Source of the DNA: Paramoeba atlantica
Taxonomy: Eukaryota; Protista; Discosea
Length of the DNA: 64,000 nt
Assembly: GCA_977017575.1 (NCBI GenBank)
Contig: CDRNVI010000063.1
Location: forward strand, 1-64,000
Direction: 5' to 3'
In this document: in pieces, positions 7,437 through 42,188 of the stretch
How the letters are laid out: every line of letters begins with the position of its first letter
Position numbering within the stretch: position 1 is the first letter of the stretch
Program-made: the position numbers and the translations under genes
The notes under the pieces: generated by a model
Told to the model about the DNA's origin: nothing
Seen by the model: the letters and a program-made list of their open reading frames with translations, nothing else
Databases searched by the model: none

Positions 7437-7521
7437 AAAACTCACCTGACACGAAATCAGGCCACAAATCGGGCACGACGAATTAACCTACGGTACTGAG
7501 GGAGTAGTATCTCCATCAATA
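7437..7521 (+). repeat. Dispersed repeat family B ending in a stem-loop (GAGGGAG-TAGTAT-CTCCMTC-AATA); second copy at 8375-8471
   Basis: Near-identical sequence at 7437-7521 and 8375-8471. Confidence 0.85.
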
Positions 7522-7928
7522 TTTTTAAGTATGTCCTAAAAGCTTTATGAGAACAAAATTGGATTTATAAATTTCACAATTTTTATAATTTTTTTTCGAA
7601 AATTCTGTCTTGCCATTTATAAAAATCAATGAGAGACAGAGTATATAGCCATCGAAACATGCTCCCTATGACCCCTTACAGCTTCCCACGCGAGGAAGTC
7701 GTCGTCGCCGCGGCAAAAAGACAAGGATCCGCCTTCTGCCTTTTTGCCATGCGCCTCCTCCTTCCTCTAAGGCCTTGCGTGTCACACACTTCCAGGTAAA
7801 GTTTGGCCTTTGTAGGTGTATTACCGGAACAGGGTGGAGAAATATCGAATGAAACCAAAGCGTATACACTTATATCAGGCTCCAAACTCTAAAAAATCGG
7901 TCTAGGAGCTGATTTGGGAAAAATGCAA

Positions 7929-24053: not shown

Positions 24054-24299
24054 TCATTTCTCTTTCGGAATTATTTTCGTACCATCTACGCTAAGGGCTT
24101 GCAGTTTATCAGGTAAAGTGAAATCGTTGACATTACCGTAAAGCTCCGAGTTATTGTCAAGGCAAAACCATGACAATCGTGGTGGAAGGTTATCAAATCG
24201 CACCAATCCGGAAAACTGATTATTAGAACAGTCGAGAGCATCAAGTTCGAAAGGTAAGTGTTGTAAATTAAGTGGTCCTGTAAACTTGTTGTATGATAG
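24054..24299 (-). pseudogene. 3' half of an LRR gene split by retrotransposon 24300-26138 (not in the ORF track)
   Basis: Hand translation: LSYNKFTGPLNLQHLPFELDALDCSNNQFSG...DNNSELYG...DGTKIIPKEK*; joins in frame to ...LPRSMINID at 26139. Confidence 0.9.
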
Positions 24300-26138
24300 T
24301 TTAATTTATCATACCTTTATAAGGCAGAGAATATGCGGATAGGCCTGGGGGGCGCATATGACGCTGCCCAGACCTATCTTTTACAGACGTTATACCCGTC
24401 CTTCTGTCCAAACGGCAGACTCGCGGTTCTGCCAGATAATGAAACTGCCTCGAAGGGCGGTCTGCATTAGACTTTCTCGACATTTTTCCGCAAGCTTTGT
24501 GTCCTCGTCAAAGAGGAGATTGAGGTTTCGACAAGATGTGAGTAACGAGCCGCGGGCTCCCACTTCGAATACAACAAGGGTCGTCCTAGGGTGATTAATG
24601 CGTCGTTCATGGAAGAGAGCATTATATTTACGGGATTTGCCCTCGTGCGCCTGAGACTGGTTCTCTTCCCAGGGCACAGTGAGCTCAATGATGAACTCAC
24701 TTCCATCCTTAAGTGTAATCAAACCGTCGGGGCGAAGAAGGTCCTCACGGGTGCCGAGCCATGCCGGGGCATTCCTAAATCCGGGGATATCTAGGTGTAC
24801 GCTCTTGGTATACGGCGAACGCAGCAAGTGTTTTCCGAGCTCTTCAAGTAACATGTCATGACGGAGGGTATATCTCCCTTGCTGAAGGGACTCTTTGCAC
24901 CCCGAGAGCACGTGCCTTGTTGTTTGAGGTTCGAGTTTACATATGGGACATGTTACACTCGCACGCCGGAGACCCCAAAGCCGAAGATTGGTTCTGGATG
25001 GTAGGGGTGAAAGCGTTAGTACTGAAGCTGCGAAGCGAGAAAGTTTTTCACTGTTGAGGTTGTTCAGGGCCGCTGAGAACTCTTTCGCGAGATCAGCCTC
25101 GGAGGGGAGGCTCCACTATTTTGCTGCTGTCGGTGCCCGTCTCTGAAGCTGATTTATGACGTAAGATTCATGGTGATCACGGGCTATCTGTTGCGCCTTC
25201 CGCGCGTCATGAAGGTGTTGAATGGCGTCAGCGCTTGGACGAATATAACCAGAGGATCGTTTTTCTTCTTCTTGCTTGATTCGGGCTCGTAGTGCCGCCT
25301 GTATCGATGGGTCCCGCCACTTGTGCATCTGTGTTAAGGCTAGGATAGAGCATTCGGACCACAGCTTGGATAAACTTTTAAGGTTCCACCCTCGTTCAGT
25401 ATAAAGAATTTCGGTGCAAGTCGTGGATGCTGCATTGATCCATTTCTTAAGGTGACGTGTAATTCTTTTCTGCAATCGCAATACAAAGTTGAAAGTGACA
25501 CACGGGTGAACGGTGAGGGCGTAGCGCAGACGGGATACGATCGCTCTGTTGTAGATCCAAAGTTTTTCGGGGAGACTGTGTGCACTCTCGTCGACATTCC
25601 GAAGCCATGTTCTTAGTCTGACATCCAGCTTTTTGAAAAGTTCTTTCGCTTGCTGTGCTCCTGGTGCTATGGTCATTCCAAGAAAAGTGCTTCCACGGTC
25701 AAATATATGTGGTATCGCTTTGCCTTCGATACTGAGTCTCGGCTTCCTGGTCATGTACCCCGGGTGCTCACTGCCTTCACGCATGGACATGCACTGTGTA
25801 CGGCTCTTGTCTACGTTGATTGAGAGTCCTATTCGTCTCAGTGCAGTTTCGAGTGTGTTGGTCGCGTGCTGCATGTCGGTATCGCTGCTAGTCAGTATCG
25901 TCAGGTCGTCAACGTAGGCTTTCAGGAAATGCCTTGGAGTATCTGGGTAGTCAAGGCCATACCGGGGGCACGATTGCTTGAGGTATCGTAGTACAGTTTC
26001 CATCACTAAGTTGAAAATTATGGGCGACAGGGTATCACCTTGTAGTACGCCTCTGTGTATCGGTATAGCACGTGACAAACCTTCGACACACTTAATACGC
26101 ATTTCCGCATGTGAATACATGCTTCTATGTATGTTCTC
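24300..26138 (-). mobile_element. 5'-truncated HERO-like (R2-group) RT-REL retrotransposon, one nonsense codon (TAG at 25116-25118 where the homologue has Trp)
   Basis: QGDTLSP, AYVDD, CPIC..H....C knuckle, GRYTLRHD, RPD..IELTVPWEEN; ORFs 25116-26537 and 24390-24911 are in the same frame; short AAA tail. Confidence 0.92.
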
Positions 26139-26737
26139 ATCTATGTTAATCATAGATCGCGGTAGACTGGTGAGGTCGATTTCACCGGATAAATTGGTGT
26201 CCGACATTAATAAGAGGAAAATATGATTCCCCAGGCAGGTTAAATCTATATTCCCCTGAAAAAAGTTGTTACACAGGATAAGTTCCTCCATGTTTTGTGG
26301 TAAATGGTGGAATTCCAAAGAGCCTGAAAATTGGTTACAGTTTATGGCAAACTCATCAAGTTCAGCCGGCAACATATCGAACAGTACTTTTCCCGTAAGA
26401 TCGTTGCAAGATGCTTTAAATTTGTGTAACGTGCGTAATGTGTAACGCCATTGCAGTGATCCTTTCAGTCGATTACTCCCAAATATGCCGAATGTTTCCC
26501 AAATAATGTTCGTTACTTGTTGTCCATCACAATCCACACCTTTCCACTCACATGCTGGCGTTGATGTATTCCACGATGGGTCTGGGTTCTCAATATCAGC
26601 GGCAAATCGTGCGAGCTCATATTCTTGTGGTTATTCGTTCCTCGCACCCTACTGGGAAGTCTACGTGTTGCATCGACATTTGACACATCAGCTGTGCAAC
26701 ACAGATAATACACTAAGGATATCATATTCGTACTCAT
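26139..26737 (-). pseudogene. 5' half of the split LRR gene (1-nt frameshift at ~26631)
   Basis: SRVRGTN-/-PQEYELARFAADIENPDPSW...PACEWKGVDC cap, then LRRs ending LTSLPRSMINID. Confidence 0.9.
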
Positions 26738-26914
26738 CGGTGTTACTGAGAACCGTTTACACAGAAAGTAAAAAAAATGTGCAACAATTCAATTTGGTAA
26801 AACATGGTAAAACCACGTCGAAAAATTGACCAAAACAATTTCCCCAAAAAGAAGAGGTCCGACGCCTACGAAGAGTTTCTGTGTACACGTTTTAGCCCCT
26901 TCTACAACCCGATT

Positions 26915-29734
26915 TCATTCCTTACCCCCTCCCCCCCTTTCCCCTCCCCTCTCCTCCCCCTCCCTCCCCCCCACCATCTCCCACACCACCAGCACCGCCA
27001 ACGCGATCCCCGGCCCGACCACCACCCCTTTCAACCCAAACGTCGTCACCCCTAGTACCATCGCGAGACCCACCAACGGGGAGGACAACCCTGGCACCCG
27101 CAACAGGGTGTCCTCCCCCCCCCGCGCCCCCACCCCCACCACCCACACCAGCGCGACCATCCCGGCCACGCTCACGGGGGTAGTACCACTACTACCCCTA
27201 CGACTACCACTACTACTGTTGTAGTCGTAGGGGTAGGGGTAGTGGTAGTAGTGGTAGTAGGCCCGGAGCGCTGCGGGGAGCACCGCGACGGAGTACTTGG
27301 GGATGTAGGGGAAGAGCCCTGTGGCGGCTCCGAGGGTTGCGGCGAGGGCGGGGTAGGGGAAGGCGAGGAGGGCGAGGGTGAGGTAGGTGACGGCGCCGTG
27401 GAAGAGGGTGAGGTGGAGGAGGGAGAGGGTGAGGGACTGGAGGCGGGAGGTGAGGGCGGCGTCGAAGGTGGTGGCGAAGGTGGTGGAGGGGGAGGGAGGG
27501 GGGTGGGGACGGGGACGGGGGGGTGGGGGGGGTTTGTTGTTGGGGCTGGGGGTTGGATGGGTAGTCGGGTTGGGGGTTGGATGGGTATTCGGGTTGTTAC
27601 TTGGATGGGTATTCGGGTTGTTGTTTAGGTTGTTATTGGTGTTGTGATTGGAGCTGTTCTTGAGGGTGGATGGGGAGGAGAAACTGGATTGTGGGTTTTG
27701 GGGGGTCGTACGGTTTTTGGGGGGAGGGAGGGTTGGAGCTGGAGGAGGTCGTAGTAGGCTTTGGGTTTTGGGGGGAGTGGTTTTGGAGGGTAGTGGAGTG
27801 GGGGGTTGTGGATGGAGGGGAATACTGGAGGCTCGGATTCCGTGCCGTGGGAGGTATCCGGGGGCGGTGCCACCTCGGCCCAGTGAAATGGGGACGGTGT
27901 GTTTCGTTTTTGCGCCCGCGGGTTTCTTGGTATGCTCCGTTGAAAAACTCGGGCGACGTGGTGAGGGGGAGCGTGAGATAGCGATGTCGGGGTGTGCCTC
28001 CGTTTGTTCTTTACACGGATAGCTCTCCGGAACCACCCCACCCCGTCGGTACCCCTCACCCGATGCAGCCACCGACCGACTGCCTCCTCCTCCCCCCTGT
28101 AGCATACGATGTCCCTTTAGTACGAGGTAGTACACTAGAGTGTGGGGCTGACGGTGTAAAAAAGTCCATAGCAAAAAGAACAACACCACCTCGTAGGCCA
28201 TCGAGAATGATCCGAGGATCAGACCCGCACACAGTGCCGCACTGGAGGCCAGCCCCGTAAAAAGAGAAGCCCCCCCGGACTGGGCCACACTCAGCATGGA
28301 GTCCACCGGGAGGCGCGCCGGTAGGGCATGTGTGAGGTTGTGGTAGAGTTGGGAGAGCGCCGCGAGACGCTCCTGGCTGATCCACGACCCCGAAGAAGAG
28401 AATTGTGGGGATGAAAAGCCGAAGTTCCCGTCCCAGTAGGGCGCCAGGTGCGACACAAGGGTGTGGTACACTGTCGTGAGGTAGGAGTGGGTCGCTGTGG
28501 TGTTGTACGCGGATGCAACTGGGAGCACAGCAGTTTCGTTTCCTTGCTGCAGCAGAGACGGAAGGGCTGAGAGTGTAGCACTCAGGTTGCTGTGAGACGA
28601 AGCCGGCTGGGTGCCATTGTGCCAAAACGTTTGAAGCGCCTCCTCCAATTGACGTGCGTGGCGTACCAGGTCGTATTGCTGAATCCACTTCTCGAGCTGG
28701 TCCTTGGCGTGTGGAAGGAGTGCAGAGCCGTAAAAGCTGACGTGGGGTTCGACCAATTGGTTCAGCGTGGAGGCATGGGCACGAAAGCTCTCAAGCAGAC
28801 TTAAAATTTCGCGCGTCGCACCGTCGAGAACGCACACGCAAGTCGCGCCCAGCAGAATGATACAAAGCAACGCTCGTAGACGCCGCGCAAGAGACGACAG
28901 CGTCAATGCAAAGTCGCGATATTGCTCCGGACTTGCGGTGAGAACAGTAGGTCCGAACGTTTTCTTGCGTTGAACGTAGAAGAGAAATTGCGGCAGAAAG
29001 GATCTCAGGCGCACCAAAGGGGAACGATGTGAAGAAGGGATGTAGCACCAAATCCACAATGGGCCCGACAATGACAAAAGAAAGAGTAAAGCCAAAAAAG
29101 AACGACCGAAAATGGAGCCTAGGACAACGCAGTATGAGAGTACCCCGAGAGTATCCAGCGTGTGCCGACCAATCAGGTGTTCCAGTGCTCCAGTAATTGT
29201 GGAACCCAGAAAAGCATGAAGCAAAGCACGGATTCCAAGCACCTTTGCACTTCCAGACAGCACTAATTCTAACGTTATCCTCCAGCTCCGTATAACTGTG
29301 GTGAAGGGAAAGACAGAGGAGTTGTCCAGAACACGCCGTGCTTGAAGTTGCGAATGTAGACTGCGCACTTCCCCTTGCTTGTGGGAGGGGTGAAAAACGA
29401 CGCTTAAGGCGACGGCCCACAAGATAGTGTCCCAATAGGGACCCAACAAGGTCCAGAGAAAAACCAAGGCGAGAAGAATAGTAGAGGTGAGAAGAAGGGC
29501 CAAAACTACAGTCCACAAGAGTGTGGTGGGATTCAGTGCATGAGAAGTCGGACGAGAACCGTTTGTTTGAAATGAAGAAGGTATAGCGTAGGTCAAAGGA
29601 GAGGACCAATCGGGAGGAGGAAAAGGTGCTGACAGAATGGATGGGGTGGCGCTGGTACGATAATGGGGAGAATGTGTGCGTGAGGGCCTTAAAGGCGGAT
29701 CGAAATCATAGAGAGAATCAGAAGGATCTTCCAT
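26915..29734 (-). CDS. TMEM245-like / AI-2E (PerM) family multi-pass membrane protein with a long Pro/Asn/Thr low-complexity insert
   Basis: YWDTILWAVALSVVFHP near the N-terminus, C-terminal GVTTFGLKGVVVGP, and multiple hydrophobic segments. Confidence 0.7.
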   Translation of the reverse strand: MEDPSDSLYDFDPPLRPSRTHSPHYRTSATPSILSAPFPPPDWSSPLTYAIPSSFQTNGSRPTSHALNPTTLLWTVVLALLLTSTILLALVFLWTLLGPYWDTILWAVALSVVFHPSHKQGEVRSLHSQLQARRVLDNSSVFPFTTVIRSWRITLELVLSGSAKVLGIRALLHAFLGSTITGALEHLIGRHTLDTLGVLSYCVVLGSIFGRSFLALLFLLSLSGPLWIWCYIPSSHRSPLVRLRSFLPQFLFYVQRKKTFGPTVLTASPEQYRDFALTLSSLARRLRALLCIILLGATCVCVLDGATREILSLLESFRAHASTLNQLVEPHVSFYGSALLPHAKDQLEKWIQQYDLVRHARQLEEALQTFWHNGTQPASSHSNLSATLSALPSLLQQGNETAVLPVASAYNTTATHSYLTTVYHTLVSHLAPYWDGNFGFSSPQFSSSGSWISQERLAALSQLYHNLTHALPARLPVDSMLSVAQSGGASLFTGLASSAALCAGLILGSFSMAYEVVLFFLLWTFLHRQPHTLVYYLVLKGHRMLQGGGGGSRSVAASGEGYRRGGVVPESYPCKEQTEAHPDIAISRSPSPRRPSFSTEHTKKPAGAKTKHTVPISLGRGGTAPGYLPRHGIRASSIPLHPQPPTPLPSKTTPPKTQSLLRPPPAPTLPPPKNRTTPQNPQSSFSSPSTLKNSSNHNTNNNLNNNPNTHPSNNPNTHPTPNPTTHPTPSPNNKPPPPPRPRPHPPPSPSTTFATTFDAALTSRLQSLTLSLLHLTLFHGAVTYLTLALLAFPYPALAATLGAATGLFPYIPKYSVAVLPAALRAYYHYYHYPYPYDYNSSSGSRRGSSGTTPVSVAGMVALVWVVGVGARGGEDTLLRVPGLSSPLVGLAMVLGVTTFGLKGVVVGPGIALAVLVVWEMVGGREGEERGGERGGGGKE

Positions 29735-30432
29735 GCCAGATTTTAAAGTAGAAGTACAGAAAAGAAATAAAAAAAGTACACTTTTGTAGATAATGCGGAA
29801 ATAGAGACTTTCTAATTATCAGCCCTACAAGCCCCCGAAGCATCGTGCCCCCTGTACTACTCTCCTTTTCATAAGGAACCCTTAAAGAACCGTCGACACA
29901 TTAATTCAGGGGAAAAACATCAGGGGTGAGGTTGGGGTCTGCCGGAGTACGCTTAAAAGGAGGGGGTGCGGTACTGTCCCCGCAAACACACGTATCGCGG
30001 GAAAGATAAAATAAGGGAAGGTAAACTAAGGGAAAAATCGTAGTTGATCGTTTATTTCAGTAATCGAGGGTAGAGCGGCAGTTGTGCGACCATCGAAACA
30101 AATCACTGAACTCCATCTTTAAAAAACGATACACTTTCATCAAAACAGTACAAACCCTCATCAAAATGTTGCAAGCTAAAGTACGCATAAAATTTTAGCA
30201 CAGTCCACGTTTTCCAATTTTTTCTAATTTGCTTCAAAAAGAAATATCGGAAAAAATCTTTACATTTCTGTTACAGAAAACATTGATACATGTACAGAAT
30301 TTCTGTACATGAAGCCGAAAGTTACATTGAAAACATTCTTTAAACATTTTAACGATAGTTAAAAGATTGTTAAAATCGTAAGGGAAATAAAACTTTGTAC
30401 ATCTAGATTGTCTTTTATTTCTCTTCTGACAA

Positions 30433-31017
30433 TTACTTCACTACTATTTTTGTGTCAAACCAGTCTCGAAGACGTAAAGTATTAGGCAATTTTTGCATAT
30501 CGATGACGCCACCCAAATCCCTGTTTCTCGATAAAAACATGCTCCGCAGATTGTCGGGAATATAATCGAAGCACAGGTCTCCTGAAAAATTGTTGTCTGG
30601 AACCCAAAATTCGCGCAGTGTATGCGGAAGACTTCGAAGTTCAATAGAGCCTTCAAAAGCATTGTTTGTCAAACGAAGGACTTCTAATTGGGGAGGAATA
30701 TAGCTCCAATTTACGCTACCCGACAACATGTTTCGGCAAAGCGAAAGATAAGTCAGGGTTTGGGGGATGTATTCCCATTGAAGAGTACCCGAAAGATGCA
30801 TATTTTCCCATGAAATACCGCGAATCGTGCCTTGCGCATCGCATTCCACACCTACCCACATATTAGCCGAGTTTTCTGCTTTCCAGGAGCTGTGATGATA
30901 TTTTACGCAAGCGATAAATCGAATAAGTTCATATTCTTGTGGCATTGAAGTACCTCTAACTTTTTTTGCTTGGGAGGCCTTCATCGCGTCGCGGTACTGT
31001 AAAGGTATGAGAAACAT
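30433..31017 (-). CDS. Leucine-rich repeat protein
   Basis: KKVRGTSMPQEYEL...WVGVEC cap and about 4 LRRs. Confidence 0.9.
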   Translation of the reverse strand: MFLIPLQYRDAMKASQAKKVRGTSMPQEYELIRFIACVKYHHSSWKAENSANMWVGVECDAQGTIRGISWENMHLSGTLQWEYIPQTLTYLSLCRNMLSGSVNWSYIPPQLEVLRLTNNAFEGSIELRSLPHTLREFWVPDNNFSGDLCFDYIPDNLRSMFLSRNRDLGGVIDMQKLPNTLRLRDWFDTKIVVK

Positions 31018-31276
31018 GATCGAGATTAAATAAGAAAACTGTGAACTCCGATGTGTAATTTAAATATTAGAGTTCAAATACTTCGTTTACCCCTTTAATC
31101 CCCCCCTTTTCGTAACCTCTCATACGCCAGCTTGTTTGTTTCTTAAAAAGTCCTGAATGATATACTACGACCCTTTGTTGATAAGATGTTGCTAAAAGTG
31201 TAACCTAGGACGCTTGTCCGAAGTCAAGACCAAAAGTTTCGCACGTATTCTGGAAAAACGAAAATTGCGAAAATAA

Positions 31277-31951
31277 TTATTGAAAAAGAAATGAAAGAGT
31301 GAGTAGTCCAATTATCGTAGCGAATCCAAGATAATGTCGCGGTTCACTAGCTTCTTCCATATGATCATGCACGACAGAAGGCCAAGCAGACTCCGACGCA
31401 TCTTCAGGAAATATGAAAACTTTATTTCCTCGCAAATCAACCCGGATAAAGGAGGAAAGAAAAGAAACATCAACAACACCAACGAAATAGTTCTGGTTTA
31501 GGAGAAGTCTCGACAAATTTACTGGCAAGGTAGTCAGATCAAGTGTTCCTTTAAGAAAATTGTCCGAGACCGAAAGGTAGTTGAGGTTGGAGGGTAGCGA
31601 AGTAAGATCAAGTTCGGATGTAAACTCATTGTGTCGAAGTTCTATTTCCAGGATTTGGTTCCCCACCTCTATTAAAGACACCTCTCCTTGAAGCTTGTTG
31701 TTAGAAACATCTATGCGGTACACCTCAACAGGGAGAAAACGCCACGTGAGATTACCTCTCAAGTGCATCATCCCCCAGTCGAGTCGAACGAGCGGTACAT
31801 CCCAAGGTGCAGGCCGCACTTTATCCCACTTTGACAATGGAGTCAATGCATTCCAGGATTGTTCGGTGTGGTGTACATTTTGCAAGAAGGAAACCAAACG
31901 AACTTCTGGAGGATGAAAACAGGATCGCGCCTTAGCAAGTCGAGACATCAA
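31277..31951 (-). CDS. Leucine-rich repeat protein with a hydrophobic C-terminal tail (possible anchor)
   Basis: Cap variant, about 4 LRRs, ends YLGFATIIGLLTLSFLFQ. Confidence 0.85.
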   Translation of the reverse strand: MMSRLAKARSCFHPPEVRLVSFLQNVHHTEQSWNALTPLSKWDKVRPAPWDVPLVRLDWGMMHLRGNLTWRFLPVEVYRIDVSNNKLQGEVSLIEVGNQILEIELRHNEFTSELDLTSLPSNLNYLSVSDNFLKGTLDLTTLPVNLSRLLLNQNYFVGVVDVSFLSSFIRVDLRGNKVFIFPEDASESAWPSVVHDHMEEASEPRHYLGFATIIGLLTLSFLFQ

Positions 31952-32429
31952 AAATGAGATAAAATCAAATAATAAAAACTCCTGACTCGGAAATAATCAT
32001 AATGAAATACTGTACCCCCCTGATCACCTGTCACTACGTGAGGGGTGGAAAATTCAAATGGCCTTATTCGCCAATATCACAAGACGAGTGAGTCGTTTGA
32101 GATGCTGAGCCTCAAAGAGGTGAACAAGACATCCAGGAAGTTGAGCAAACGTCCTAGAAAGGTTTTGCGGTGCGAATATCCTAAGAATTTTGATAGCCTA
32201 CTCACCAAGGCTTGACGTCTGAAGTTTTGTATTGCAAAAAGGGGAGTTGTTGTAAGTAAGAGGGGTGACTCCGGGTGGATGTACCTAGGATATCTTTCGT
32301 CAAAATTTTCCTCCTTAGTTCCTTAATATTTTTTGCTTCAATGGGAAGATACAGAAATCATGTTACTGGAATTCTTATTCTGCTGGACTTAAACGAGGGT
32401 TTCGGCATGTAATACAAGTTAATAATACA

Positions 32430-32879
32430 TTGTGCTGCCCCAAATGTCAAGTTTGGGGGGCTATAGGTGTAGGTTGGAGACACCTAGTTGTTCTCGATAA
32501 GGACTCGTCCATCACGAGCATATCTTATGTAAAGACGTTGAAGAAAGCACAATTTCCACAGAATTGTATCTTTCAACAAGATGGGGCTACAGCACACACT
32601 GCCCGTGCCTCTATGGAGTACATTACGGATGGAATGAACGATGTACTTAAAAATTGCCCCCCCAATTCGCCTGACCTTTCCCCCATAGAAAACGTTTGGT
32701 CGATGGTCCAGGATGCGGTGGACGAAAAGACTCCATCGGATAAACTTTCACTTATCCGATGTATACGCAAAGCGTGGTCTCGTTTGCCACAAAAGGTGAT
32801 CGATAAAACTGTTTTGAGTTTTGATGCTCGCCTTAAGAAGTGTATAGAACTCAAAGGCGAAAAAGTGACAAAATGGTAA
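32430..32879 (+). mobile_element. Tc1/mariner transposase C-terminal part (family 1, DD34E-like)
   Basis: VWGAIG, FQQDGATAH, PPNSPDLSPIENVWS; a possible 14-bp inverted pair AGAGGGGTGACTCC flanks it at ~32259 and ~33570. Confidence 0.85.
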
Positions 32880-34010
32880 TTGTAATCTAGAAACGCTAGT
32901 TGCTCTTTGTTTCAGCCCACTCTTAGGTGCGCAAAGTTCCTATGGTGAGATCTGCAAAACGCAACAAAAATGAGCTCAAACGGCCACCTGGTCGAGAAAA
33001 AAGGGGGGGGGGGGTGACTTTTCGTTGGGAGGGGTTTAGAAGCGTTAGTCCTGATTGCGAAGAACCGTGAAAAAGGGCTTTTTCAATGTTTCGAATCGTG
33101 CAGAGCTTCAAGGTGTGAAGGAAAGTGAATTCCCAGAATATTGGCGATGCACCCAACGAAGGATGGACAAGAATCGGAAACTGTTCTAGAAAGAGGAAAA
33201 AAGGTGCGGAAACTTATGAAAAAATGACCAGGAGTGAAATGAAATCCAAAATGAAGCAACAGAGTGAGTCACATAGACAAAAAAACGTACGAAAAAACTA
33301 GTACGAAAAAACGTACTAGTTTACTGCGTACCAGTTTAATCGCCGTAAGGCACGTACATTCAAGGAAAACAAATAGACACAATTAGCTACTCATTATGCA
33401 CCATACAATGTTTATTTTTACACCTAACTTGTTAGTAGTACTCCACTTGTTCGTTACATTTCATTGATGTATGCGTGACGTACATATTCATAGATCGATT
33501 ATGCGTTTTTTCACCAAGTCGGAGCTCCGTAGAAGTTTACTGGGAGCGCCTGGGCAGGAGTCACCCCTCTAAGTAGAGGGGTGTATTTCAGGTAGACCTA
33601 AATAAGCAATACTGTTGTACTCCTCACCAACACTGATTACACTGGGATTTCTTTTTCGAACTTTTTCGATAAAACATGTAGAACTATTTTTTTTTGGGGG
33701 AAACATTGAAAAGTATACCAATCATTTTGTCATCTACTAGGTTTCCTTTGATAAATATTTTTGGTGCACTGGACATGAGAAAATGTTTGACACCGGGAAC
33801 GGGATATAATTTTCGCGTTTTTGGTGCACTGAATAATCCAGGGATCTATTCCACTCAGTTAGAATAGAAGATGGCGGTACCACTGTTTGTTGCGGACTAT
33901 TCCTCTAGTTCACATTCTGATGTTTCTGTGGATAAGCGCGAACATTTCCTGGTACGGGATGCGGTAGAATATCAGAAAAATAATTCTGAGTTAAATCAAG
34001 ACGGTGCTTA

Positions 34011-34274
34011 CTATACTTCGGGTAAAATAGTAACATCGGCCACTCCCGTCAATTCGTTATCGGAGATGTTAAGACTGATTAAAGAGCGGGGAAGACTTTG
34101 TAGTCCCACAGAACCTGAAAAGCAGTTCTCACTTAACATACAGTGCTCCAGCTGCAAAGGAAGCTTGGAAAAGTTCAACTCCCCCGAGAAACGATTCCTC
34201 TGCAGATAGAGGTGGACCAAACCCTGCGGCAGAGAATCCAACGTGATCGTCCCAAAGAAACGGTTCTCGGACAA
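34011..34274 (-). pseudogene. 3' half of an LRR gene split by retrotransposon 34275-38894
   Basis: LSENRFFGTITLDSLPQGL... joins in frame to ...LSPTLSMLI at 38895; a further LRR-like tail continues in a shifted frame below 34011. Confidence 0.9.
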
Positions 34275-34359
34275 TGATGATGATGATATCATATCTTTTA
34301 AGATAGAGTATTTTGAGGATGTAACTAACTTGCGCATATGACGCTGTTAGGTGCATCCC

Positions 34360-36981
34360 TTATGCGGACAGTGTCTCTGCATCGCTCCATTGCGGGGAAT
34401 CACGCTTATGCCATAATAAGAAGCTGGAACGGATAGCAGCTCGGGAGAGTGACGCCCGACATTTAGCCCCCAAATCTTCGTCCCCTCCAAACAACCGATT
34501 AATATCCGCTGAGGAGGCTACCAGACCACCTCGTGCTCCAATTTCGAATACGAGGAGGTACGTGTTCGGGTGCACTGTTCGTCGTTCGTGTAATAGGGCG
34601 TTGTACTTGAGGCGTTTATATTCATTTGCCTGCATACAGTTTTCTTCCCAGGGGACAGTGAGCTCAACGATGAATTCTGTACCGTCAGTCAGTGCAACGA
34701 ATCCGTCTGGGCGTTGATGATTTGTATTGTTGTGCAGCCAGTGTGGTGGATTTCGGTGACCTAGTAGGTCAAAATGCTGGTATTTTGTATGCGGGGATTC
34801 TTGGATGCGTTTGGCCAGTTCAGCTAGCACTGTGTCGTGTCTGAGGGTATAACGCCCCTGATCAAGAGATGTTTTGCAACCTGAAATAACGTGTCGTACC
34901 GTCTGTGCTTCTTTTCCGCATACCACACATGTCGCATTTGAGAAGTGAAGGCCACATGTCCGAAGGTTTGACTTTGAGGGTAAAGGAGTGGTAAGTAGAA
35001 CCGAGGTCGCAAAACGTGTTAGCTTCGTGCTGTTCAGATTGTTCAGTACGGCGGAAAACTCCTTCGCAAGTTCAGTTTCGGAAGGTGTTGTCCACCATTG
35101 GGCTGCGACCGGTGCTCGTTTCTGAAGGTCTTGTACAATTTTCGCTTCGTAATATTCCCCCATGATTTGTTTGGCGCGTTTTGCGTCGTTTAGATGTTGG
35201 AGGATTTCGCATGCTGGTCGTAGTTGCCCTCTAGCTCGCCTGTTTTGCTCCTCTTCAATGCGGGAACGTAGCGCTGCTTGGACATTGATGTCTCTGGATT
35301 TATTCATTTGAGTCATCGCGGTGGCAGTGCATTCGAACCAAAGCTTAGAGAGTGCTGTTAGGCCCCAACCGCGATCTGAGTACAGGACTTCTGTGCTACC
35401 TTTAGAGGCCATGTTGATCCATTTCCTAATGTAGGAGGTTGCCGTCTTCTGGAGTCGAAGTATAAAGTTGAACGTTATGCATGGATGGACCGTGAAAGCA
35501 TATCGTAGGCGAGCGAGCATGACATTTTGATAGATCCATAGTTTTTCAGGTAGCGTATGTGCGCTTCGGTGCACATTTTGTAACCAAGTCTTAAGTTTCG
35601 CGTTCAACTTTTTATATAGCTCTCTGGCTTGTTGTGCTCCAGGGGCCAGTGTCATTCCCAGGAAGGCACTACCTCTGTCGCAAATGTGGGGAATCGGATC
35701 TCCGTCACATTCAATCTTTGGCCGCCTCGTCATATATCCTGGATGTTCCGTTCCCGCTCGAATGGCCATACATTGTACCCTACTTTTTTCGACGTTGATA
35801 GACAATCCAATGCGTCTAAGGACGATAGAGAGTGATTGTATTGCATTGTTCATGTCGAAATCACTTGACGTAATTATCGTAAGGTCATCAACATAAGCCT
35901 TTAGGAAGTGCTTTGGTGTATCGGGGTAGGATATGCCATAGTACGGGCATGTGCGACGCATGTAGCGGAGGACGATCTCCATCGCAATATTGAAGAGCAC
36001 TGGGGATAGAGTATCACCTTGTAGTACGCCACGTTGCACTGCGATTTCCTTGGTTAGTCCTTGGTCGCATTTGAATCTCGTAGTGGCTGAGAGATACATG
36101 CCTTTGATGTATTCAATGATTTCGGGTGACACGCGCGCCCAGGTGAGAGCTTCGAATATGCTGTCGTGGGAAAGCGAACCGAATGCGTTTCTGAGGTCGA
36201 TCTGGGCCAGACAGTACTGATTCTTCTTGCGCTGATGATGTTGCAGCAGGTTACACAGTGTTTGGGTGTGTTCCAGAGTTCCATTCATCCGTGGTAGAAA
36301 CCCCTTTTGGATAGTCGTCTCAATGACTCCTGAGCTTACAGCATGGTCCAGGAGTTGGTGTCCTATGATGCTGTGAAGAAGTTTTCCCAGACAGCTTGTG
36401 AGTGCTATGGGCCGCCAGTTCCTAGGTATTTTAGGGTCTCCACCTTTGTGGATAAGACGCGTGATCGCTAGAGACCACGACGTGGGGCATGTCCCGAATT
36501 TTATTAAGTCATTAAACATTTTGGCCAGGGAGCTGTATAGTGCTGGGCATCGTTTTAGCGCTGCGTTTGTGATTGTATCTTGCCCTGGTGAGCTAGAGCC
36601 CCGTTTGCTTGAGATGGCATTGACGATTGTTTCGGCTGTTACTGGTATCCACGTCATTTCGTTGGTGGCTCTAGGGCCTAGTATATCGAAGTTAGGGAGC
36701 CGGAGAGTGTCGCGCTCTTTCGTTAGGGTTTGACTGAAATGTTCCTCTATTTCGAGCATTGTACAGCTTGGGTATTGCGTGTTTGTGACTTCATCCTCAC
36801 TGGGTCTGTCCATGGCTTCAGCAGCCGCAGTCCATGGGTTTCTTGAGAAACGTTCATGCGCCCATCTACCTTCTAACGCTCGGCGTTGCACGTCGGCCTC
36901 GTCTGCGTAGATTCTTTCTAGCTTCTTGTTTTCTTTGATTTGGCGGGGTAAGGTACAGTGTATTTCGGGCTTCCGTGCCAT
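34360..36981 (-). CDS. Retrotransposon ORF2: reverse transcriptase, CCHC knuckle, restriction-like endonuclease
   Basis: SSPGQDTI, NWRPIAL, QKGF, IDLRNAFGS, QGDTLSP, YVDD, CVVC..RHVISGC, RPD..VELTVPWEEN. Confidence 0.95.
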   Translation of the reverse strand: MARKPEIHCTLPRQIKENKKLERIYADEADVQRRALEGRWAHERFSRNPWTAAAEAMDRPSEDEVTNTQYPSCTMLEIEEHFSQTLTKERDTLRLPNFDILGPRATNEMTWIPVTAETIVNAISSKRGSSSPGQDTITNAALKRCPALYSSLAKMFNDLIKFGTCPTSWSLAITRLIHKGGDPKIPRNWRPIALTSCLGKLLHSIIGHQLLDHAVSSGVIETTIQKGFLPRMNGTLEHTQTLCNLLQHHQRKKNQYCLAQIDLRNAFGSLSHDSIFEALTWARVSPEIIEYIKGMYLSATTRFKCDQGLTKEIAVQRGVLQGDTLSPVLFNIAMEIVLRYMRRTCPYYGISYPDTPKHFLKAYVDDLTIITSSDFDMNNAIQSLSIVLRRIGLSINVEKSRVQCMAIRAGTEHPGYMTRRPKIECDGDPIPHICDRGSAFLGMTLAPGAQQARELYKKLNAKLKTWLQNVHRSAHTLPEKLWIYQNVMLARLRYAFTVHPCITFNFILRLQKTATSYIRKWINMASKGSTEVLYSDRGWGLTALSKLWFECTATAMTQMNKSRDINVQAALRSRIEEEQNRRARGQLRPACEILQHLNDAKRAKQIMGEYYEAKIVQDLQKRAPVAAQWWTTPSETELAKEFSAVLNNLNSTKLTRFATSVLLTTPLPSKSNLRTCGLHFSNATCVVCGKEAQTVRHVISGCKTSLDQGRYTLRHDTVLAELAKRIQESPHTKYQHFDLLGHRNPPHWLHNNTNHQRPDGFVALTDGTEFIVELTVPWEENCMQANEYKRLKYNALLHERRTVHPNTYLLVFEIGARGGLVASSADINRLFGGDEDLGAKCRASLSRAAIRSSFLLWHKRDSPQWSDAETLSA

Positions 36982-38824
36982 GGGTGAATCTAAGGGATCG
37001 TTTCAGTCGTTGTATATGCTTGGATAGTTCTTGGTTCACTTTTTCTATGGCTAAAGGTCTGTATTTAAATTTGGAATGTCCTTGTTTTGTGCGAAGAACG
37101 AACCCTTTGGTGGGATTCACCTCTTGACTCACCTCAAAGGTTGATACAGCGATAGACGCGGCGAGTATAGCACCGTTCTCCTTTGCTAGGAACGCGTTTG
37201 CGGTGTCTTTGTGTAGGAGCTCCTTGCATCTCCCTAGGGCTCGCTTTTCTACTGAACGCCATTGATCATCGTTTAGTTTGACGCAGAGTTTCCCACCTTG
37301 AATGTCGTTGTGTTGTTGAAGTAGTTCATGCCTTTTCTTGTGTAAGGGATCGTCGTGGTTCGGTGCCGGGCAATGATTCGTTGCTTCTCCGGAGATATTC
37401 GTGGTATTTCTTGCATGCGTGGAAGATTGCAGTTGAGAGAGAGGCCCGTATATCTTGCAGCATCGGTGGGCGCATGAGAGCTTTTCTCGGCATGTGTGCT
37501 TGCAGGGTCCTTTTCCCCCCGCGCCTGGGTACCCAAATGTAACACAAGTCGTACTGGGTCGCGCTGCGTGGTTCGTGCTTTGATCTGGCTGTAAACTCGC
37601 GCTTTTGGGGGCTTCTTTGACGTCATTCTTCCTAGATATGTGCTTTGCTTCGTAGTGCTTCATAGTGCTGCGGTACTTCCAGTCACGCTCGGGGTCCTGT
37701 GTGGGGTCGTATCCTGACTGCATCGATCTCTCGCTTTTCTGTACTGCCTCGTTGACAGGGGCCCCTGCTTTTCTACCAGTTGCGAAAGCTTCACAGAGTT
37801 CAGAGACCCTACTAGTTGCCCATCCTGCCAACACTCCGACCTTTTCCAGAAAGGTTGTATCGTCATCATTCATGTCAGGCACTGGATTCGGGGTGGGCAG
37901 GTCGTTCACTGGGCCTTTGTACTGTGATGTTGCCGCTTTCTCTGCTCTTGAATGCGGGTTTCGCCGACTTCTAGTGGGCATGTCTGTGGCCTTCGGGGAG
38001 TGACCAAGTTCGCGAGTCGAGCTTCTCAAGTCCCATTTTAGCGTTCTGCCGGTGGTCGAGTTCAAATTCGTTGTGTCAAGGGTAGAGGTGCTTGCAGGTT
38101 CTTGATTGTGGGTAGGTCCAAATATTTTGCAACACTTGTGCAGGCACGTTAGCTTGCTAGAGCTTTTGTGTCTGCAGGGTCCTTTGAGAGGTTCCACGGT
38201 CTGTGGTTCGTTGGGTTTCGTAGAACGTGGCTTCGCAATTTGGAAAGGTGTGCCCTCTACTCTTTGTGCCGGTTGGTATGGTGTAATTTCGGTGTTGGAG
38301 TTTGTGTTTCGGGTAATTTTGATGGTAAACTTTTCAAGCCCCGGTACTTTAGCCCCGCTCACGGACTTCAGGACTGCTTTGCCTAGGGCGTTCGGGCTGG
38401 AGTACGAGTCGCTGATGCTAAGGTGGGGGTCATTGAATAGGGAAGTCCAGCTGGCGTGGTAGTACTTTTCCGATGGGTGCGAGTTTCTGCTAATTTCAAT
38501 GTAGTCGCAGGCATCGTGATGTATTAGTTCCTCGAGTGTAGCTGCCTCTATTATCAAATCATGTGGTGTTCCCTTGCCGTTGAGGGCCTTACTAAGTGCA
38601 GCTTCAGCACCTTGTTGTGAAGCGATGCGTTGTCTCACGAGATGACTAAGACAAGCGGACTTTATGTCGGGGTAGTAGTTCCAAAGCATACTATCCATCG
38701 TGCGTATTTTGACGGATCGTGCCCGGCTCTGGATGAAATGCAAAGACTGTTTCCGCGCAACGCCGGGTCCTTGAGGAAGGCCTGGTGTTGCATTTTCCTC
38801 CTGTGTGGCGGTTCTGGTTGTCAT
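36866..38824 (-). CDS. Retrotransposon ORF1 / N-terminal region with two C-x-H-x-C-x4-C-x-H-x-C-C type Zn fingers
   Basis: GPCRHKSSSKLTCLHKCCKIFGP and GPCKHTCREKLSCAHRCCKIYGP; overlaps ORF2 by 116 nt, with ORF2 in the +1 frame. Confidence 0.85.
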   Translation of the reverse strand: MTTRTATQEENATPGLPQGPGVARKQSLHFIQSRARSVKIRTMDSMLWNYYPDIKSACLSHLVRQRIASQQGAEAALSKALNGKGTPHDLIIEAATLEELIHHDACDYIEISRNSHPSEKYYHASWTSLFNDPHLSISDSYSSPNALGKAVLKSVSGAKVPGLEKFTIKITRNTNSNTEITPYQPAQRVEGTPFQIAKPRSTKPNEPQTVEPLKGPCRHKSSSKLTCLHKCCKIFGPTHNQEPASTSTLDTTNLNSTTGRTLKWDLRSSTRELGHSPKATDMPTRSRRNPHSRAEKAATSQYKGPVNDLPTPNPVPDMNDDDTTFLEKVGVLAGWATSRVSELCEAFATGRKAGAPVNEAVQKSERSMQSGYDPTQDPERDWKYRSTMKHYEAKHISRKNDVKEAPKSASLQPDQSTNHAARPSTTCVTFGYPGAGGKGPCKHTCREKLSCAHRCCKIYGPLSQLQSSTHARNTTNISGEATNHCPAPNHDDPLHKKRHELLQQHNDIQGGKLCVKLNDDQWRSVEKRALGRCKELLHKDTANAFLAKENGAILAASIAVSTFEVSQEVNPTKGFVLRTKQGHSKFKYRPLAIEKVNQELSKHIQRLKRSLRFTHGTEARNTLYLTPPNQRKQEARKNLRRRGRRATPSVRR

Positions 38825-38869
38825 GGAGGTTTCATACAGTTAGTACCAAGTAGAAAAATTAAAATAATT

Positions 38870-38898
38870 CAACAAGGTACAGAAACTGTATCTTTATC
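38870..38898 (-). other. Spliced-leader-derived 29-mer forming the 5' end of the retrotransposon
   Basis: GATAAAGATACAGTTTCTGTACCTTGTTG; ACAGTTTCTGTAC...TTG is the conserved 3' block of kinetoplastid SL exons (T. brucei ...AACAGTTTCTGTACTATATTG). Confidence 0.85.
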
Positions 38899-39422
38899 AA
38901 CATACTCAGTGTAGGGGAAAGTTGACTCAAGTCAACGGGACCGGTGAATTGGTTTCCCGGGATGTTAAGACGCACCAGCGCCGGGGGAAGACTCGCAAGT
39001 TTGACCTCTTCTTGAAAAAGATTATCATACAGCACCACCTCCTCCAGGGAGACGGGAAGCGTGTCCCAGGGAATGCCCCCTGTGAGAAATGTTTTTGTGA
39101 GGTAGAGCATTTGCGTGGTTGCGGGAAGCGCCCTGAACTCCAGGTATCCTCTGTAAAAGTCGCGCAGGACAACCACGCGCAGCCTTCCCTGGGGGTCACA
39201 TCGGAACCCCTCCCAGGTACACTCCGAGACGGGCTCACGCCCACACCATGTGAAACGTGAGAGCACCCAGCTCGAGTGGGGGTTCTCAACGCGATGTACG
39301 AGACGCTCCATTTGCTCGTCATGAGGAAGAAGCGCTGCAATGACCTTTCCGCGACGAACGTGGACGTCGTCCACAGTATGGAGGAGAGAGAAGGCGAGGG
39401 TAGAAAGGAGGAATAAGGGCAT
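38895..39422 (-). pseudogene. 5' half of the LRR gene split by the full-length retrotransposon
   Basis: RRGKV..LLP...NPHSSW...CTWEGFRC cap, then LRRs ending LSQLSPTLSMLI. Confidence 0.9.
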
Positions 39423-41456: not shown

Positions 41457-42188
41457 CTATACCATAACTCCTAGCCTTAAAAGCTCCTTGTACTTAGGGG
41501 AAAGGGTAAGTCGCTCGTCTCTGTACATACGAATGTCACCATTGCGCACAGTAATATTCGTTTCCTCGAAATCATGGTATCGAATGACCTTTGGAAGTTG
41601 TAAGATATCGATCTCACCACAAAGACCAGGATTATGACAAAACGTAATGGTTTCCAGAGTGCAAGGTAAATTTCCAAACGTCACCCCGCCACTGAACTTA
41701 TTGACCGCAAGATGCAACACTCGCATTTCGCAAGGTAAATTTCCAAATTGAGGTGTTCCAGAAAATCTGTTATGATTCATAACAAGGTCACGCATTGGAG
41801 GTGGTAGATTGTCGAACTCCACTTCTCCGATTAAATTATTCTGATTTAATACAAGAGAAACTACGGTACTGGGCAAGAATTCCCACCGCAAAAATCCTGA
41901 AAGACGAACAATATTTTTATAGGAGGATAAATAATCTCCGGAAAAATCAACGCGCATAATTTCGCCATGTTCATCACATGCCACGCCTTGCCATGTGCAA
42001 ACTGACACACTCTTGACACGCCCAAATATACTCTTCTTAGTTGCTCTCCACGACTTGGGCCTTTGCGTCAAATGTACCTTTGCGATAAAGCGTTCCAACA
42101 TGTCCATTTGTGGTAATAACATGGATGAAACCTTCCCACGACGAAAGTCAGAATCGACATCCGCTGTGTTCGAAACAATCATCTCCAT
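41457..42188 (-). CDS. Leucine-rich repeat protein
   Basis: RRGKVSSMLLPQ...VCTWQGVAC cap and about 4 LRRs. Confidence 0.9.
   Translation of the reverse strand: MEMIVSNTADVDSDFRRGKVSSMLLPQMDMLERFIAKVHLTQRPKSWRATKKSIFGRVKSVSVCTWQGVACDEHGEIMRVDFSGDYLSSYKNIVRLSGFLRWEFLPSTVVSLVLNQNNLIGEVEFDNLPPPMRDLVMNHNRFSGTPQFGNLPCEMRVLHLAVNKFSGGVTFGNLPCTLETITFCHNPGLCGEIDILQLPKVIRYHDFEETNITVRNGDIRMYRDERLTLSPKYKELLRLGVMV

What the first reader, a model, noticed from the sequence alone, without database searches (positions are those of the whole stretch)
24054..39422. Retrotransposon lineage apparently targeting the LRR-coding motif of a multigene family
Seen: two RT-REL elements (24300-26138 and 34275-38894), roughly two-thirds identical in protein by eye, each split a different LRR paralogue in sense orientation with no evident TSD. 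Removing them restores LPRSMINID|LSYNKFTG and LSPTLSMLI|LSENRFFG. These are the same codon boundary of the 23-aa repeat; the targets read GAT|CTATCATACAACAAGTTTACAGG and ATA|TTGTCCGAGAACCGTTTCTTTGG, consensus |YTRTCMnAnAACnnnTTYnnnGG. Known: R2-group REL elements with specificity usually target rDNA, SL genes, snRNA, tRNA or microsatellites. Inference: this lineage uses the redundant LRR family as a safe-haven target, which I do not recall being described. The element ORFs stayed almost open despite the divergence, arguing for independent insertions rather than duplication of one old insertion. Caveat: n=2.
Basis: partly seen in the sequence, partly recalled or inferred. Interest (0 to 1): 0.92.

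Follow-up and report, generated by a model that had tools for sequence, protein, structure and literature searches.

The report
Retrotransposons that home to LRR codons
A family of R2-like jumping genes in this spliced-leader protist repeatedly inserts at one exact codon boundary of leucine-rich-repeat genes, so a protein-coding repeat motif serves as its landing site instead of the usual rRNA, small-RNA or microsatellite targets.

Summary
Both elements lie on the minus strand, in sense, inside two different LRR genes. Each sits between residue 5 and the L of LSxNxFxG in the 23-aa repeat, without a target-site duplication.

The interpretation also holds, but as a preference rather than strict specificity.
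- I read 105 element 3' ends from the whole genome, giving about 74 distinct insertion sites.
- Seventeen of these abut an LRR unit in sense at that same register.
- Ten show the strict DNA motif YTN7AAYN3TTYN3GG at the junction, where about 0.13 are expected (P about 3e-16).
- Hits occur in five subfamilies (A, B, D, E, F) whose ORF2 regions are only about 50-60% identical.
- Copies within a subfamily are 98-100% identical but have unrelated flanks.
- E1's subfamily is the most specific, with 6 of 8 young copies in LRR repeats. E2's subfamily is weaker, with 3 of 15.

A 97%-identical second haplotype or paralogue (contig C20) carries E2's site empty and the LRR frame intact. It also carries another element two repeats downstream at the same register.

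The elements are RT plus CCHC plus restriction-like-endonuclease retrotransposons. They start with a truncated host spliced leader and end in a covarying 3' hairpin. A sister subfamily targets (TG)n.

This scan had already reported the same phenomenon on other pieces of this genome. I found no paper describing it. The nearest precedent is the RHS hot spot of trypanosomes.

The parts
24054..24299 (-). 3' part of the LRR gene split by E1 (LSYNKFTG... to the TGA stop at 24056-24054)
   Evidence: reading; three more 23-aa units follow in frame
24300..26124 (-). E1: a 5'-truncated copy of subfamily B. It has a 3' UTR (24300-24389) with tail ...gataaattaaa and an ORF2 remnant (RT C-terminal part, CCHC, RLE). 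One in-frame TAA lies at 25118-25116.
   Evidence: The last 261 nt are 99-100% identical to 9 other genomic places. Homology to a full-length B copy starts at 26124.
26125..26138 (-). 14 nt of filler (gagaacatacatag) at E1's 5' junction. It belongs to neither the LRR frame nor subfamily B.
26139..26537 (-). 5' part of the LRR gene split by E1 (...IDLTSLPRSMINID)
34011..34274 (-). 3' part of the LRR gene split by E2 (LSENRFFG..., four units, then a stop)
   Evidence: The same sequence is continuous with the 5' part in contig C20.
34275..34359 (-). E2 3' UTR. It has a (TCA)n-like tail (34275-34290) and a hairpin around 34325-34353 whose apical CGT-N5-GCG is conserved while its stems covary between subfamilies.
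34360..36981 (-). E2 ORF2, 873 aa: RT (aa 181-404), CCHC knuckle (aa 685-702) and the restriction-like endonuclease motifs RHD, RPD and E-x-T...E
   Evidence: (R2Bm 8gh6, E 6.5e-32, alignment running through CCHC/RHN)
36866..38824 (-). E2 ORF1, 652 aa, no Pfam match. It has two CxHx(8)CxHxCC motifs (aa 217 and 441). In sister copies it is fused in frame to ORF2.
   Evidence: A 7-nt difference at 36953 is seen in other copies, and open frames reach 1489 aa.
38870..38896 (-). Spliced-leader-derived head taaagatacagtttctgtaccttgttg, the 3' 27 nt of the host SL, joined directly to the element's 5' UTR (38825-38869)
   Evidence: The full SL ...CTTTAACGATAAAGATACAGTTTC occurs at about 650 matched places in the genome.
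38897..39422 (-). 5' part of the LRR gene split by E2 (N-terminal cap plus repeats, ending ...LSQLSPTLSML)
   Evidence: 97% identical to L066:1-3226

Best explanation
E1 and E2 are independent, recent insertions of two sister subfamilies of a large family of non-LTR retrotransposons. The elements encode a reverse transcriptase, a CCHC knuckle and a restriction-like endonuclease (R2-type architecture). The host is a protist that uses a kinetoplastid-type spliced leader.

The family inserts preferentially at one fixed position of the host's 23-aa LRR coding repeat: the boundary just before the L codon of LxxNxFxG. It inserts in the sense orientation and leaves no target-site duplication.

Proposed mechanism:
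1. The element RNA gets its 5' end by SL trans-splicing. This is shown by the SL exon's 3' end abutting the 5' UTR.
2. The protein binds the covarying 3' UTR hairpin (inferred).
3. It recognises LRR DNA through the few codon-constrained bases: YT at codon 1, AAY at codon 4, TTY at codon 6, GG at codon 8, and downstream T and CTNCC positions (inferred).
4. It nicks the antisense strand at the codon boundary and primes reverse transcription from the short non-poly(A) tail (inferred by analogy with R2).
5. The second strand is cut within about 0-2 nt. The 5' junction forms inside the SL around nt 11-14, sometimes with filler or a 1-2 nt target loss. The junction sequences are shown; the mechanism is inferred.

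The variable number (1-5) of N-terminal CxHxCx5CxHxCC modules is the most likely target-reading part. This is a guess.

Specificity is a preference. It is strong in subfamily B and partial in E, F, A and D. A sister subfamily homes to (TG)n.
For: Anatomy.

Genome-wide census:
- The ORF2 search gave 1291 candidates, of which 52 were scored.
- 3' end searches were run per subfamily.
- 105 3' ends collapse to about 74 distinct flanks.
- 10 carry the strict motif at the tail end, where 0.13 are expected. The genome holds 5102 such sites on both strands, against 1398 for the reversed control. Poisson P is about 3e-16.
- 7 more are looser LRR units at the same register.
- All repeat-unit hits are in sense, and none is antisense or at another register.
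- B-young copies: 6 of 8 in repeats, plus 1 in an LRR gene's N-terminal cap.

Independence of the insertions:
- Within-subfamily branch lengths are about 0, with unrelated flanks.
- LRR hits occur in A, B, D, E and F.

Empty site:
- L066 (C20) reads ...atgttgaat|ttgtccgag... with the ORF intact.
- The same joined form appears in contigs of runs X1 and X2, and the filled 3' junction appears in X3.
- A separate B copy sits two units downstream, at LEHC(M)|LSEN, only in C20.
- A matched 5'/3' junction pair of another B copy restores FEDLA|LTDNRFNG.

Target switching within the family: the H copy in L111 lies between (GT)n on both sides with the same truncated SL head.

The 3' hairpin covaries between subfamilies.
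Against: - Only about 23% of sampled distinct insertions are in LRR repeats. E2's own subfamily has 3 of 15, D has 1 of 12, and G and the older B-like group have 0. Three extra copies from a second assembly were 0 of 3.
- Junctions were placed by anchor plus inspection, and tails vary by a few nt.
- No biochemical evidence exists for cleavage specificity.
- Which protein part reads the DNA is unknown. There is no Pfam match for the N-terminal part.
- Targeted units show no base preference beyond the average LRR unit, so the recognition code is undefined.
- Some long-poly(A) copies at non-LRR sites suggest a second, non-specific insertion route.
Confidence: 0.85

Rival explanations
1. One old insertion into an LRR unit was spread by duplication of LRR genes, or by ectopic gene conversion between LRR paralogues. 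That would explain the shared register and orientation without any endonuclease specificity.
For: LRR genes are a large clustered family: the window alone has at least 6. Many flanks occur twice in the assembly as haplotigs or segmental duplicates.
Against: - After removing duplicate flanks, copies that are 98-100% identical have flanks that differ from the first base and share only the LRR consensus.
- Five subfamilies about 50% apart each show the register.
- 5' truncation with filler (E1), variable tails, and an empty allele for E2 are marks of separate reverse-transcription events.
Confidence: 0.03
2. Insertion is random. Copies survive preferentially in dispensable LRR genes because insertions elsewhere are removed by selection.
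For: Most sampled copies (about 75%) are outside LRR repeats. LRR genes are numerous and probably individually dispensable.
Against: - Selection on gene disruption cannot fix the position within the 69-nt repeat or the strand.
- 17 of 17 repeat-unit hits are in sense and within a few nt of one codon boundary. The chance per event is about 7/138.
- The copies are very young, with near-zero branches, which leaves little time for filtering.
Confidence: 0.04
3. The endonuclease is really spliced-leader-gene specific (CRE/SLACS-like) and hits LRR codons only because AAC-NNN-TTC-T resembles the SL core ACAGTTTCTG.
For: - Two copies (L002, L099) abut the SL exon from about nt 12-15 plus SL-intron-like sequence.
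- Heads of targeted copies start at about SL nt 11-14, the classical CRE site.
- E2's target ccgtttct resembles the SL's cagtttct.
Against: - Aligning the cut sites puts the similar bases 3 nt out of register.
- At the unconstrained codons 5 and 7, targeted units show no SL-like enrichment over 89 background units.
- Far more sampled copies lie in LRR units than next to SL sequence.
- The two SL-flanked cases may be concatemers with SL-RNA-derived elements rather than true SL genes.
Confidence: 0.06

Closest known systems
R2 and the other RLE-bearing site-specific non-LTR retrotransposons (R2, R4, NeSL/Utopia, CRE, HERO)
   Same: - RT followed by a CCHC knuckle and a PD-(D/E)xK-type endonuclease, with no APE domain.
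- Best solved-structure match is R2Bm.
- One long ORF in intact copies.
- Sequence-specific insertion, 5' truncation, little or no TSD, and a structured 3' UTR.
- Subfamilies with different targets. The (TG)n-specific sister recalls the Togen families (PMC4640811).
   Different: [quoted passage not shown] Here the target is a codon boundary in a protein-coding repeat.
- Specificity is partial.
- The N-terminal part has CxHxCx5CxHxCC modules instead of the C2H2/Myb known for R2 (my own knowledge of R2).
- The 5' end is a trans-spliced leader.
CRE clade of kinetoplastids (SLACS, CZAR, CRE1/2)
   Same: - The host uses a kinetoplastid-type SL.
- The architecture is RT plus RLE.
- CRE elements insert at one fixed position of SL RNA genes (PMC12278014).
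- Here, element heads and two 3' flanks break the SL at about nt 11-15.
   Different: - Most targeted copies here are in LRR genes, not SL genes.
- Clade membership by RT phylogeny could not be tested, because no named CRE sequence was reachable with the tools.
RHS (retrotransposon hot spot) multigene family of Trypanosoma with ingi/RIME and L1Tc/NARTc
   Same: A protein-coding multigene family of a kinetoplastid carries a fixed hot spot where non-LTR retroelements insert. This produces many split pseudogenes (PMC7563717, citing Bringaud 2002).
   Different: - RHS has one site per gene, in the 5' coding region.
- It is used by APE-type ingi-clade elements with relative site preference (my own knowledge of the ingi clade).
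- Here RLE-type elements use a motif repeated several times per gene (thousands of sites per genome), in a different gene family.

Membership tests
RLE-bearing (R2-type) non-LTR retrotransposon | Reverse transcriptase domain of the non-LTR type | tested here: met
   RVT_1 E 6e-29. R2Bm 8gh6 E 6.5e-32, ahead of LINE-1 ORF2p at about 1e-24.
RLE-bearing (R2-type) non-LTR retrotransposon | CCHC motif and restriction-like endonuclease (RHD/N ... K/RPD ... D/E-x-K type) C-terminal to the RT, with no APE domain | tested here: met
   CVVCGKEAQTVRHVISGC, RYTLRHD, RPDGF and IVELTVPWEE are read in ORF2. The alignment to R2Bm runs through CCHC and RHN. No Exo_endo_phos hit. Catalysis was not assayed.
RLE-bearing (R2-type) non-LTR retrotransposon | Insertion marks of target-primed reverse transcription: 5' truncation, variable 3' tail, empty versus filled sites | tested here: met
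   E1 is truncated with filler. Tails vary between copies. An empty site exists.
Site-specific retrotransposon with the LRR unit as target | Independent copies at the same nucleotide position and strand of the target, far above chance | tested here: met
   17 of about 74 distinct sites; strict motif 10 observed versus 0.13 expected. The specificity is partial and depends on subfamily.
CRE clade (SLACS/CZAR/CRE1/2) | Insertion at a fixed position of SL RNA genes | tested here: inconclusive
   L002 and L099 abut the SL exon from about nt 12-15 plus intron-like sequence. These may be SL-RNA-derived elements rather than SL genes.
CRE clade (SLACS/CZAR/CRE1/2) | RT groups with named CRE elements in a phylogeny | not testable with these tools
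   No named CRE, NeSL or R4 sequence was returned. The tree has only unnamed outgroups.
R2 clade proper | 28S rDNA target; N-terminal C2H2 zinc finger and Myb | tested here: not met
   The targets are LRR, (TG)n and other sites. There is no Pfam zinc-finger or Myb hit in the N-terminal part. CxHxCx5CxHxCC modules are present instead.
RHS/ingi-type hot spot | APE-type ingi-clade element inserting in an RHS gene | tested here: not met
   The element has an RLE and no APE domain. The host genes are LRR genes.
Leucine-rich repeat gene family (host target) | Tandem 23-aa units LxxLxLxxNxFxGxΦxLxxLP | tested here: met
   The periodicity was read. Pfam LRR_1 and LRR_4 scores are just under the cutoff. 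The genome holds 5102 strict DNA motifs against 1398 for the control.

The most novel reading that the evidence does not exclude
An ancient radiation of RLE retrotransposons has adopted the DNA that encodes a protein repeat motif (LxxNxFxG of an LRR family, thousands of sites per genome) as its homing site. It reads the few codon-constrained bases of that motif. Sister subfamilies use (TG)n and possibly SL sequences. This would be the first protein-coding homing target for restriction-like-endonuclease elements. It would also be a natural system in which target switching can be mapped to a variable array of CxHxCx5CxHxCC modules.
Probability: 0.7. Interest if true: 0.8.

Novelty: new variant of a known kind. 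Interest (0 to 1): 0.74.

Why it matters
Site-specific RLE retrotransposons are the model for target-primed reverse transcription and are being developed as gene-insertion tools. All their catalogued targets are non-coding multicopy sequences (PMC4640811).

This lineage hits a degenerate, codon-constrained motif with single-nucleotide precision. That raises the question of how an R2-type protein recognises a target defined by only about 10-12 scattered bases.

The genome offers a ready series for mapping the determinants:
- five subfamilies with graded LRR preference;
- a (TG)n-specific sister subfamily;
- young copies with matched empty alleles.

For the host, the elements continually break and may reshuffle a large LRR gene family. 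This is a second, mechanistically different example beside the RHS genes of trypanosomes.

Tried and rejected
I used the genome-wide pattern count instead.
The 35-place versions worked, but the 5' flanks (7 codons) were only read by eye. Roughly 8 of 18 truncated-head flanks look like LPxxLxxL. I do not count this as statistics.
- Fetching the 5' ends of four full-length B copies by estimated distance hit the junction in only one (L108).
- Organism and clade naming failed. Homologue search, Atlas and cluster look-up gave no names, and a literature search for the SL string found nothing.
- Pfam on the N-terminal part gave nothing, even at E <= 5.
- Three extra copies from assembly ERZ24900291 (L112-L114) were not in LRR genes. 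A fourth (L111) was (TG)n-specific.
- The SL-mimic reading of the target was rejected. The duplication/conversion and retention-bias readings were also rejected (see rivals).
- I did not fold the CxHxC modules, because low-diversity input was unlikely to be informative.
Full report
**What is in the window**

Both elements lie on the minus strand.

E2 (34275-38896) is full length. Its parts, from 5' to 3', are:
- a 27-nt head, taaagatacagtttctgtaccttgttg;
- a short 5' UTR;
- ORF1, 652 aa, with no Pfam match and two CxHx8CxHxCC motifs;
- ORF2, 873 aa, with RVT_1 at E 6e-29, a CCHC knuckle (CVVCGKEAQTVRHVISGC), and then RHD, RPD and E-x-T...E;
- an 85-nt 3' UTR ending in a (TCA)n-like tail.

The best solved relative is R2Bm (8gh6, E 6.5e-32). 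That alignment runs through the CCHC and RHN motifs. LINE-1 ORF2p scores lower, at about 1e-24. No APE domain is present.

E1 (24300-26124) is a 5'-truncated copy of a sister subfamily. It is 56-60% identical to E2 in ORF2. It has one in-frame TAA and 14 nt of filler at its 5' junction.

Removing each element restores an exact 23-aa LRR unit in frame:
- E1: MINID|LSYNKFTGPLNLQHLPFE
- E2: LSMLx|LSENRFFGTITLDSLPQG

Neither element has a target-site duplication.

**Whole-genome test**

The window is contig C63 of a 45.7-Mb, 248-contig assembly. A six-frame search with ORF2 gave 1291 candidates, and 52 were scored. They fall into subfamilies 48-59% identical to E2, plus four copies at 97-99%.

I read 3' junctions from those loci and from DNA searches with each subfamily's last 260 nt. 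Many flanks occur twice, as haplotigs or segmental duplicates. After collapsing these, 105 ends give about 74 distinct insertion sites.

- Ten sites have the strict DNA motif YTN7AAYN3TTYN3GG (L-x-x-N-x-F-x-G) starting exactly where the element tail ends.
- Four more fit a looser protein motif at the same spot.
- Three more are clear LRR units by inspection.
- In total, 17 sites lie in sense at one register.

Genome-wide, the strict motif occurs 5102 times on both strands, against 1398 for the reversed control. That is 5.6e-5 per oriented position. Allowing 31 offsets per junction, 0.13 hits are expected, and 10 are seen (P about 3e-16).

No insertion inside a repeat unit was antisense or at another register. 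One copy (L039) sits in an LRR gene's N-terminal cap, outside the repeats.

| Subfamily | Distinct sites in LRR repeats |
|---|---|
| B-young (E1's type) | 6 of 8, plus 1 in an LRR gene's N-terminal cap |
| E | 5 of 16 |
| F | 2-3 of 8 |
| A (E2's type) | 3 of 15 |
| D | 1-3 of 12 |
| C | 0-1 of 4 |
| G | 0 |
| Older B-like group | 0 |

**Independence of the insertions**

- In an ORF2 tree, the LRR-hitting subfamilies A, B, D, E and F are separated by long branches. Copies within each subfamily have near-zero branches.
- E1's last 261 nt are 99-100% identical to nine other places whose flanks are unrelated.
- Flanks differ from the first base after the junction and share only the LRR consensus.

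This excludes a single old insertion spread by gene duplication or gene conversion. It also excludes simple retention bias, which cannot fix the register and the strand.

**Empty site**

Contig C20 (L066) is 97% identical to the window from 42128 down to 38897. It then continues straight into E2's 3' flank...actgagaatgttgaat|ttgtccgagaaccgcctcttcggg. The LRR ORF is intact there.

Contigs of two public runs of the same organism contain this joined form, 34274 joined to 38897 with AT between. A third run contains the filled 3' junction.

E2 is therefore an insertion that one haplotype (or a very recent paralogue) lacks. Two nt of target are missing at its 5' junction.

In C20 the same gene carries a different element. 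A full-length B copy sits two repeat units downstream at LEHC(M)|LSENCFSG, a site that is empty in the window. Together with E1, this makes three events at one register in this neighbourhood.

A further B copy gave a matched junction pair, FEDLA|LTDNRFNG.

**The target**

Sixteen targeted units were compared with 89 other LRR units from the sequence I held. They show no base preference beyond the family consensus: YT, AAY, TTY, GG, then T, T and CTNCC. Any unit of this LRR family appears eligible.

In particular, the unconstrained codons 5 and 7 show no enrichment for spliced-leader-like bases. The similar bases would also be 3 nt out of register. I therefore reject the idea that LRR codons are hit as an SL look-alike. 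An earlier follow-up in this scan reached the same conclusion.

**The 5' head and the wider family**

The head is the 3' part of the host's spliced leader. The string ...CTTTAACGATAAAGATACAGTTTC occurs at about 650 matched places (the search required a non-G first base, so the true number is somewhat higher). Most are heads of retrocopies, often directly after a poly(A) tail.

Copies at specific targets start within the SL at about nt 11-14, (A)TAAAGATACAG. This is the region where CRE-clade elements split SL genes (PMC12278014).

Two copies (L002, L099) abut the SL exon from that position plus intron-like sequence. These could be SL genes or SL-RNA-derived elements, and I leave this open.

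A more distant subfamily, 39% identical (P0008, L111), lies between (GT)n on both sides with the same truncated head. The family therefore contains members with different targets, as in other RLE clades (PMC4640811).

Intact copies have one long ORF. E2's two-ORF layout comes from a private 7-nt difference at 36953. The N-terminal part carries 1-5 CxHxCx5CxHxCC modules depending on subfamily and has no Pfam match.

The 3' UTRs share a hairpin with an invariant apical CGT...GCG. Its stems differ between subfamilies but stay paired.

In subfamilies F and E, copies with long poly(A) tails are all at non-LRR sites, whereas LRR-inserted copies have short defined tails. This hints at a second, non-specific route for some copies.

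**Mechanism**

Shown:
- precise, oriented, recurrent insertion at one codon boundary;
- no TSD;
- SL-derived 5' ends;
- 5' truncation and filler;
- R2-type domain set;
- young copies and empty alleles.

Inferred by analogy with R2:
- the protein binds the 3' hairpin;
- it nicks the antisense strand at the boundary and primes cDNA synthesis there;
- the second strand is cut almost opposite.

Guessed:
- the Cys/His modules read the target;
- sense insertion into transcribed LRR genes, followed by trans-splicing, supplies the element's RNA.

**Comparison with what is known**

By architecture this is an RLE-bearing, R2-type retrotransposon. Membership of the CRE clade is plausible but could not be tested, because no named reference sequences were reachable.

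[quoted passage not shown] I found no report of an LRR or other protein-coding motif as a target.

The nearest precedent for a coding multigene family used as a retroelement hot spot is the RHS family of trypanosomes, which is hit by ingi/RIME (PMC7563717). That case involves APE-type elements (my own knowledge of the ingi clade) and one site per gene.

I rate this a new variant of a known kind.

The same phenomenon was already reported by this scan on other pieces of this genome (s1-369847, s1-377395, s1-369839, s1-377381). My census is independent of those reports and agrees with them.

**Limits**

- The sample is partial.
- Junction calls rely on anchors and inspection.
- Specificity is a preference.
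- Nothing here is biochemical.

Noticed in passing
L066:3365-3420 (= C20:397365-397420): The 5' junction of the C20-only B copy is doubled. It reads cactgtat + aaagatacagtttcttt + cactgtat + aaagatacagtttctgtaccttgttg. That is an 8-nt target repeat bracketing a 17-nt SL fragment, as if an abortive event preceded the full insertion.
   Followed up: partly
window 36953 (E2, ORF1/ORF2 overlap 36866-36981): Other copies of subfamily A lack 7 nt here (runs X1, X2, X4) and have one open frame of up to 1489 aa. E2's two-ORF layout is therefore a private frameshift, not a programmed one.
   Followed up: partly
L111:2600-3000 and 7506-7900 (ENA ERZ24900291 ctg3877l): A 1501-aa relative (39% identity, five CxHxCx5CxHxCC modules) is flanked by (GT)n on both sides and has the same truncated SL head. 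It is a (TG)n-specific sister subfamily. Its 3' UTR holds a 70-nt tandem duplication.
   Followed up: partly
G000:C44:23236-39606: Four subfamily F copies sit head to tail with a 5370-nt period. They are joined by about 20-nt poly(A) tracts followed by the same flank. This is a tandem array of a polyadenylated form, not in LRR genes.
   Followed up: no
genome-wide, e.g. G000:C1:9764-25076: About 650 matched SL copies (somewhat more in truth, because the search required a non-G first base). Many are full-length heads placed directly after A-runs, and some form arrays with about 5.09-kb spacing. The recurrent upstream string CGTACAATAAT may mark the true SL RNA genes.
   Followed up: no
L108:45-170 (= C54:575694-575820): The 5' UTR of subfamily B after the SL head (ttcatcctttctttccccggcaacgggcat...gcccgttgccggc) resembles the SL-RNA intron seen in L002, L016 and L099. 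The B 5' region may derive from an SL RNA gene rather than from trans-splicing alone.
   Followed up: no
L029, L082, L018 3' flanks: Three copies of subfamilies E and D abut a shared repeat (...cctcgtgcgaaaaataagggtgggtgcc...). This may be a second recurrent landing site or another mobile element.
   Followed up: no
window 32430-32879 (+): A Tc1/mariner-type DDE_3 transposase fragment (E 8e-9) lies between LRR genes.
   Followed up: no
window 26915-29734 (-): A 939-aa open frame, GC-rich (53%), rich in Pro/Ser/Thr and with hydrophobic stretches. It has no Pfam match and lies between the two LRR genes that carry E1 and E2.
   Followed up: no
window 30433-31017, 31277-31951, 41457-42188 (-): Three further LRR genes of the same family, uninterrupted. 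Together with the two split genes they form a same-strand cluster.
   Followed up: no
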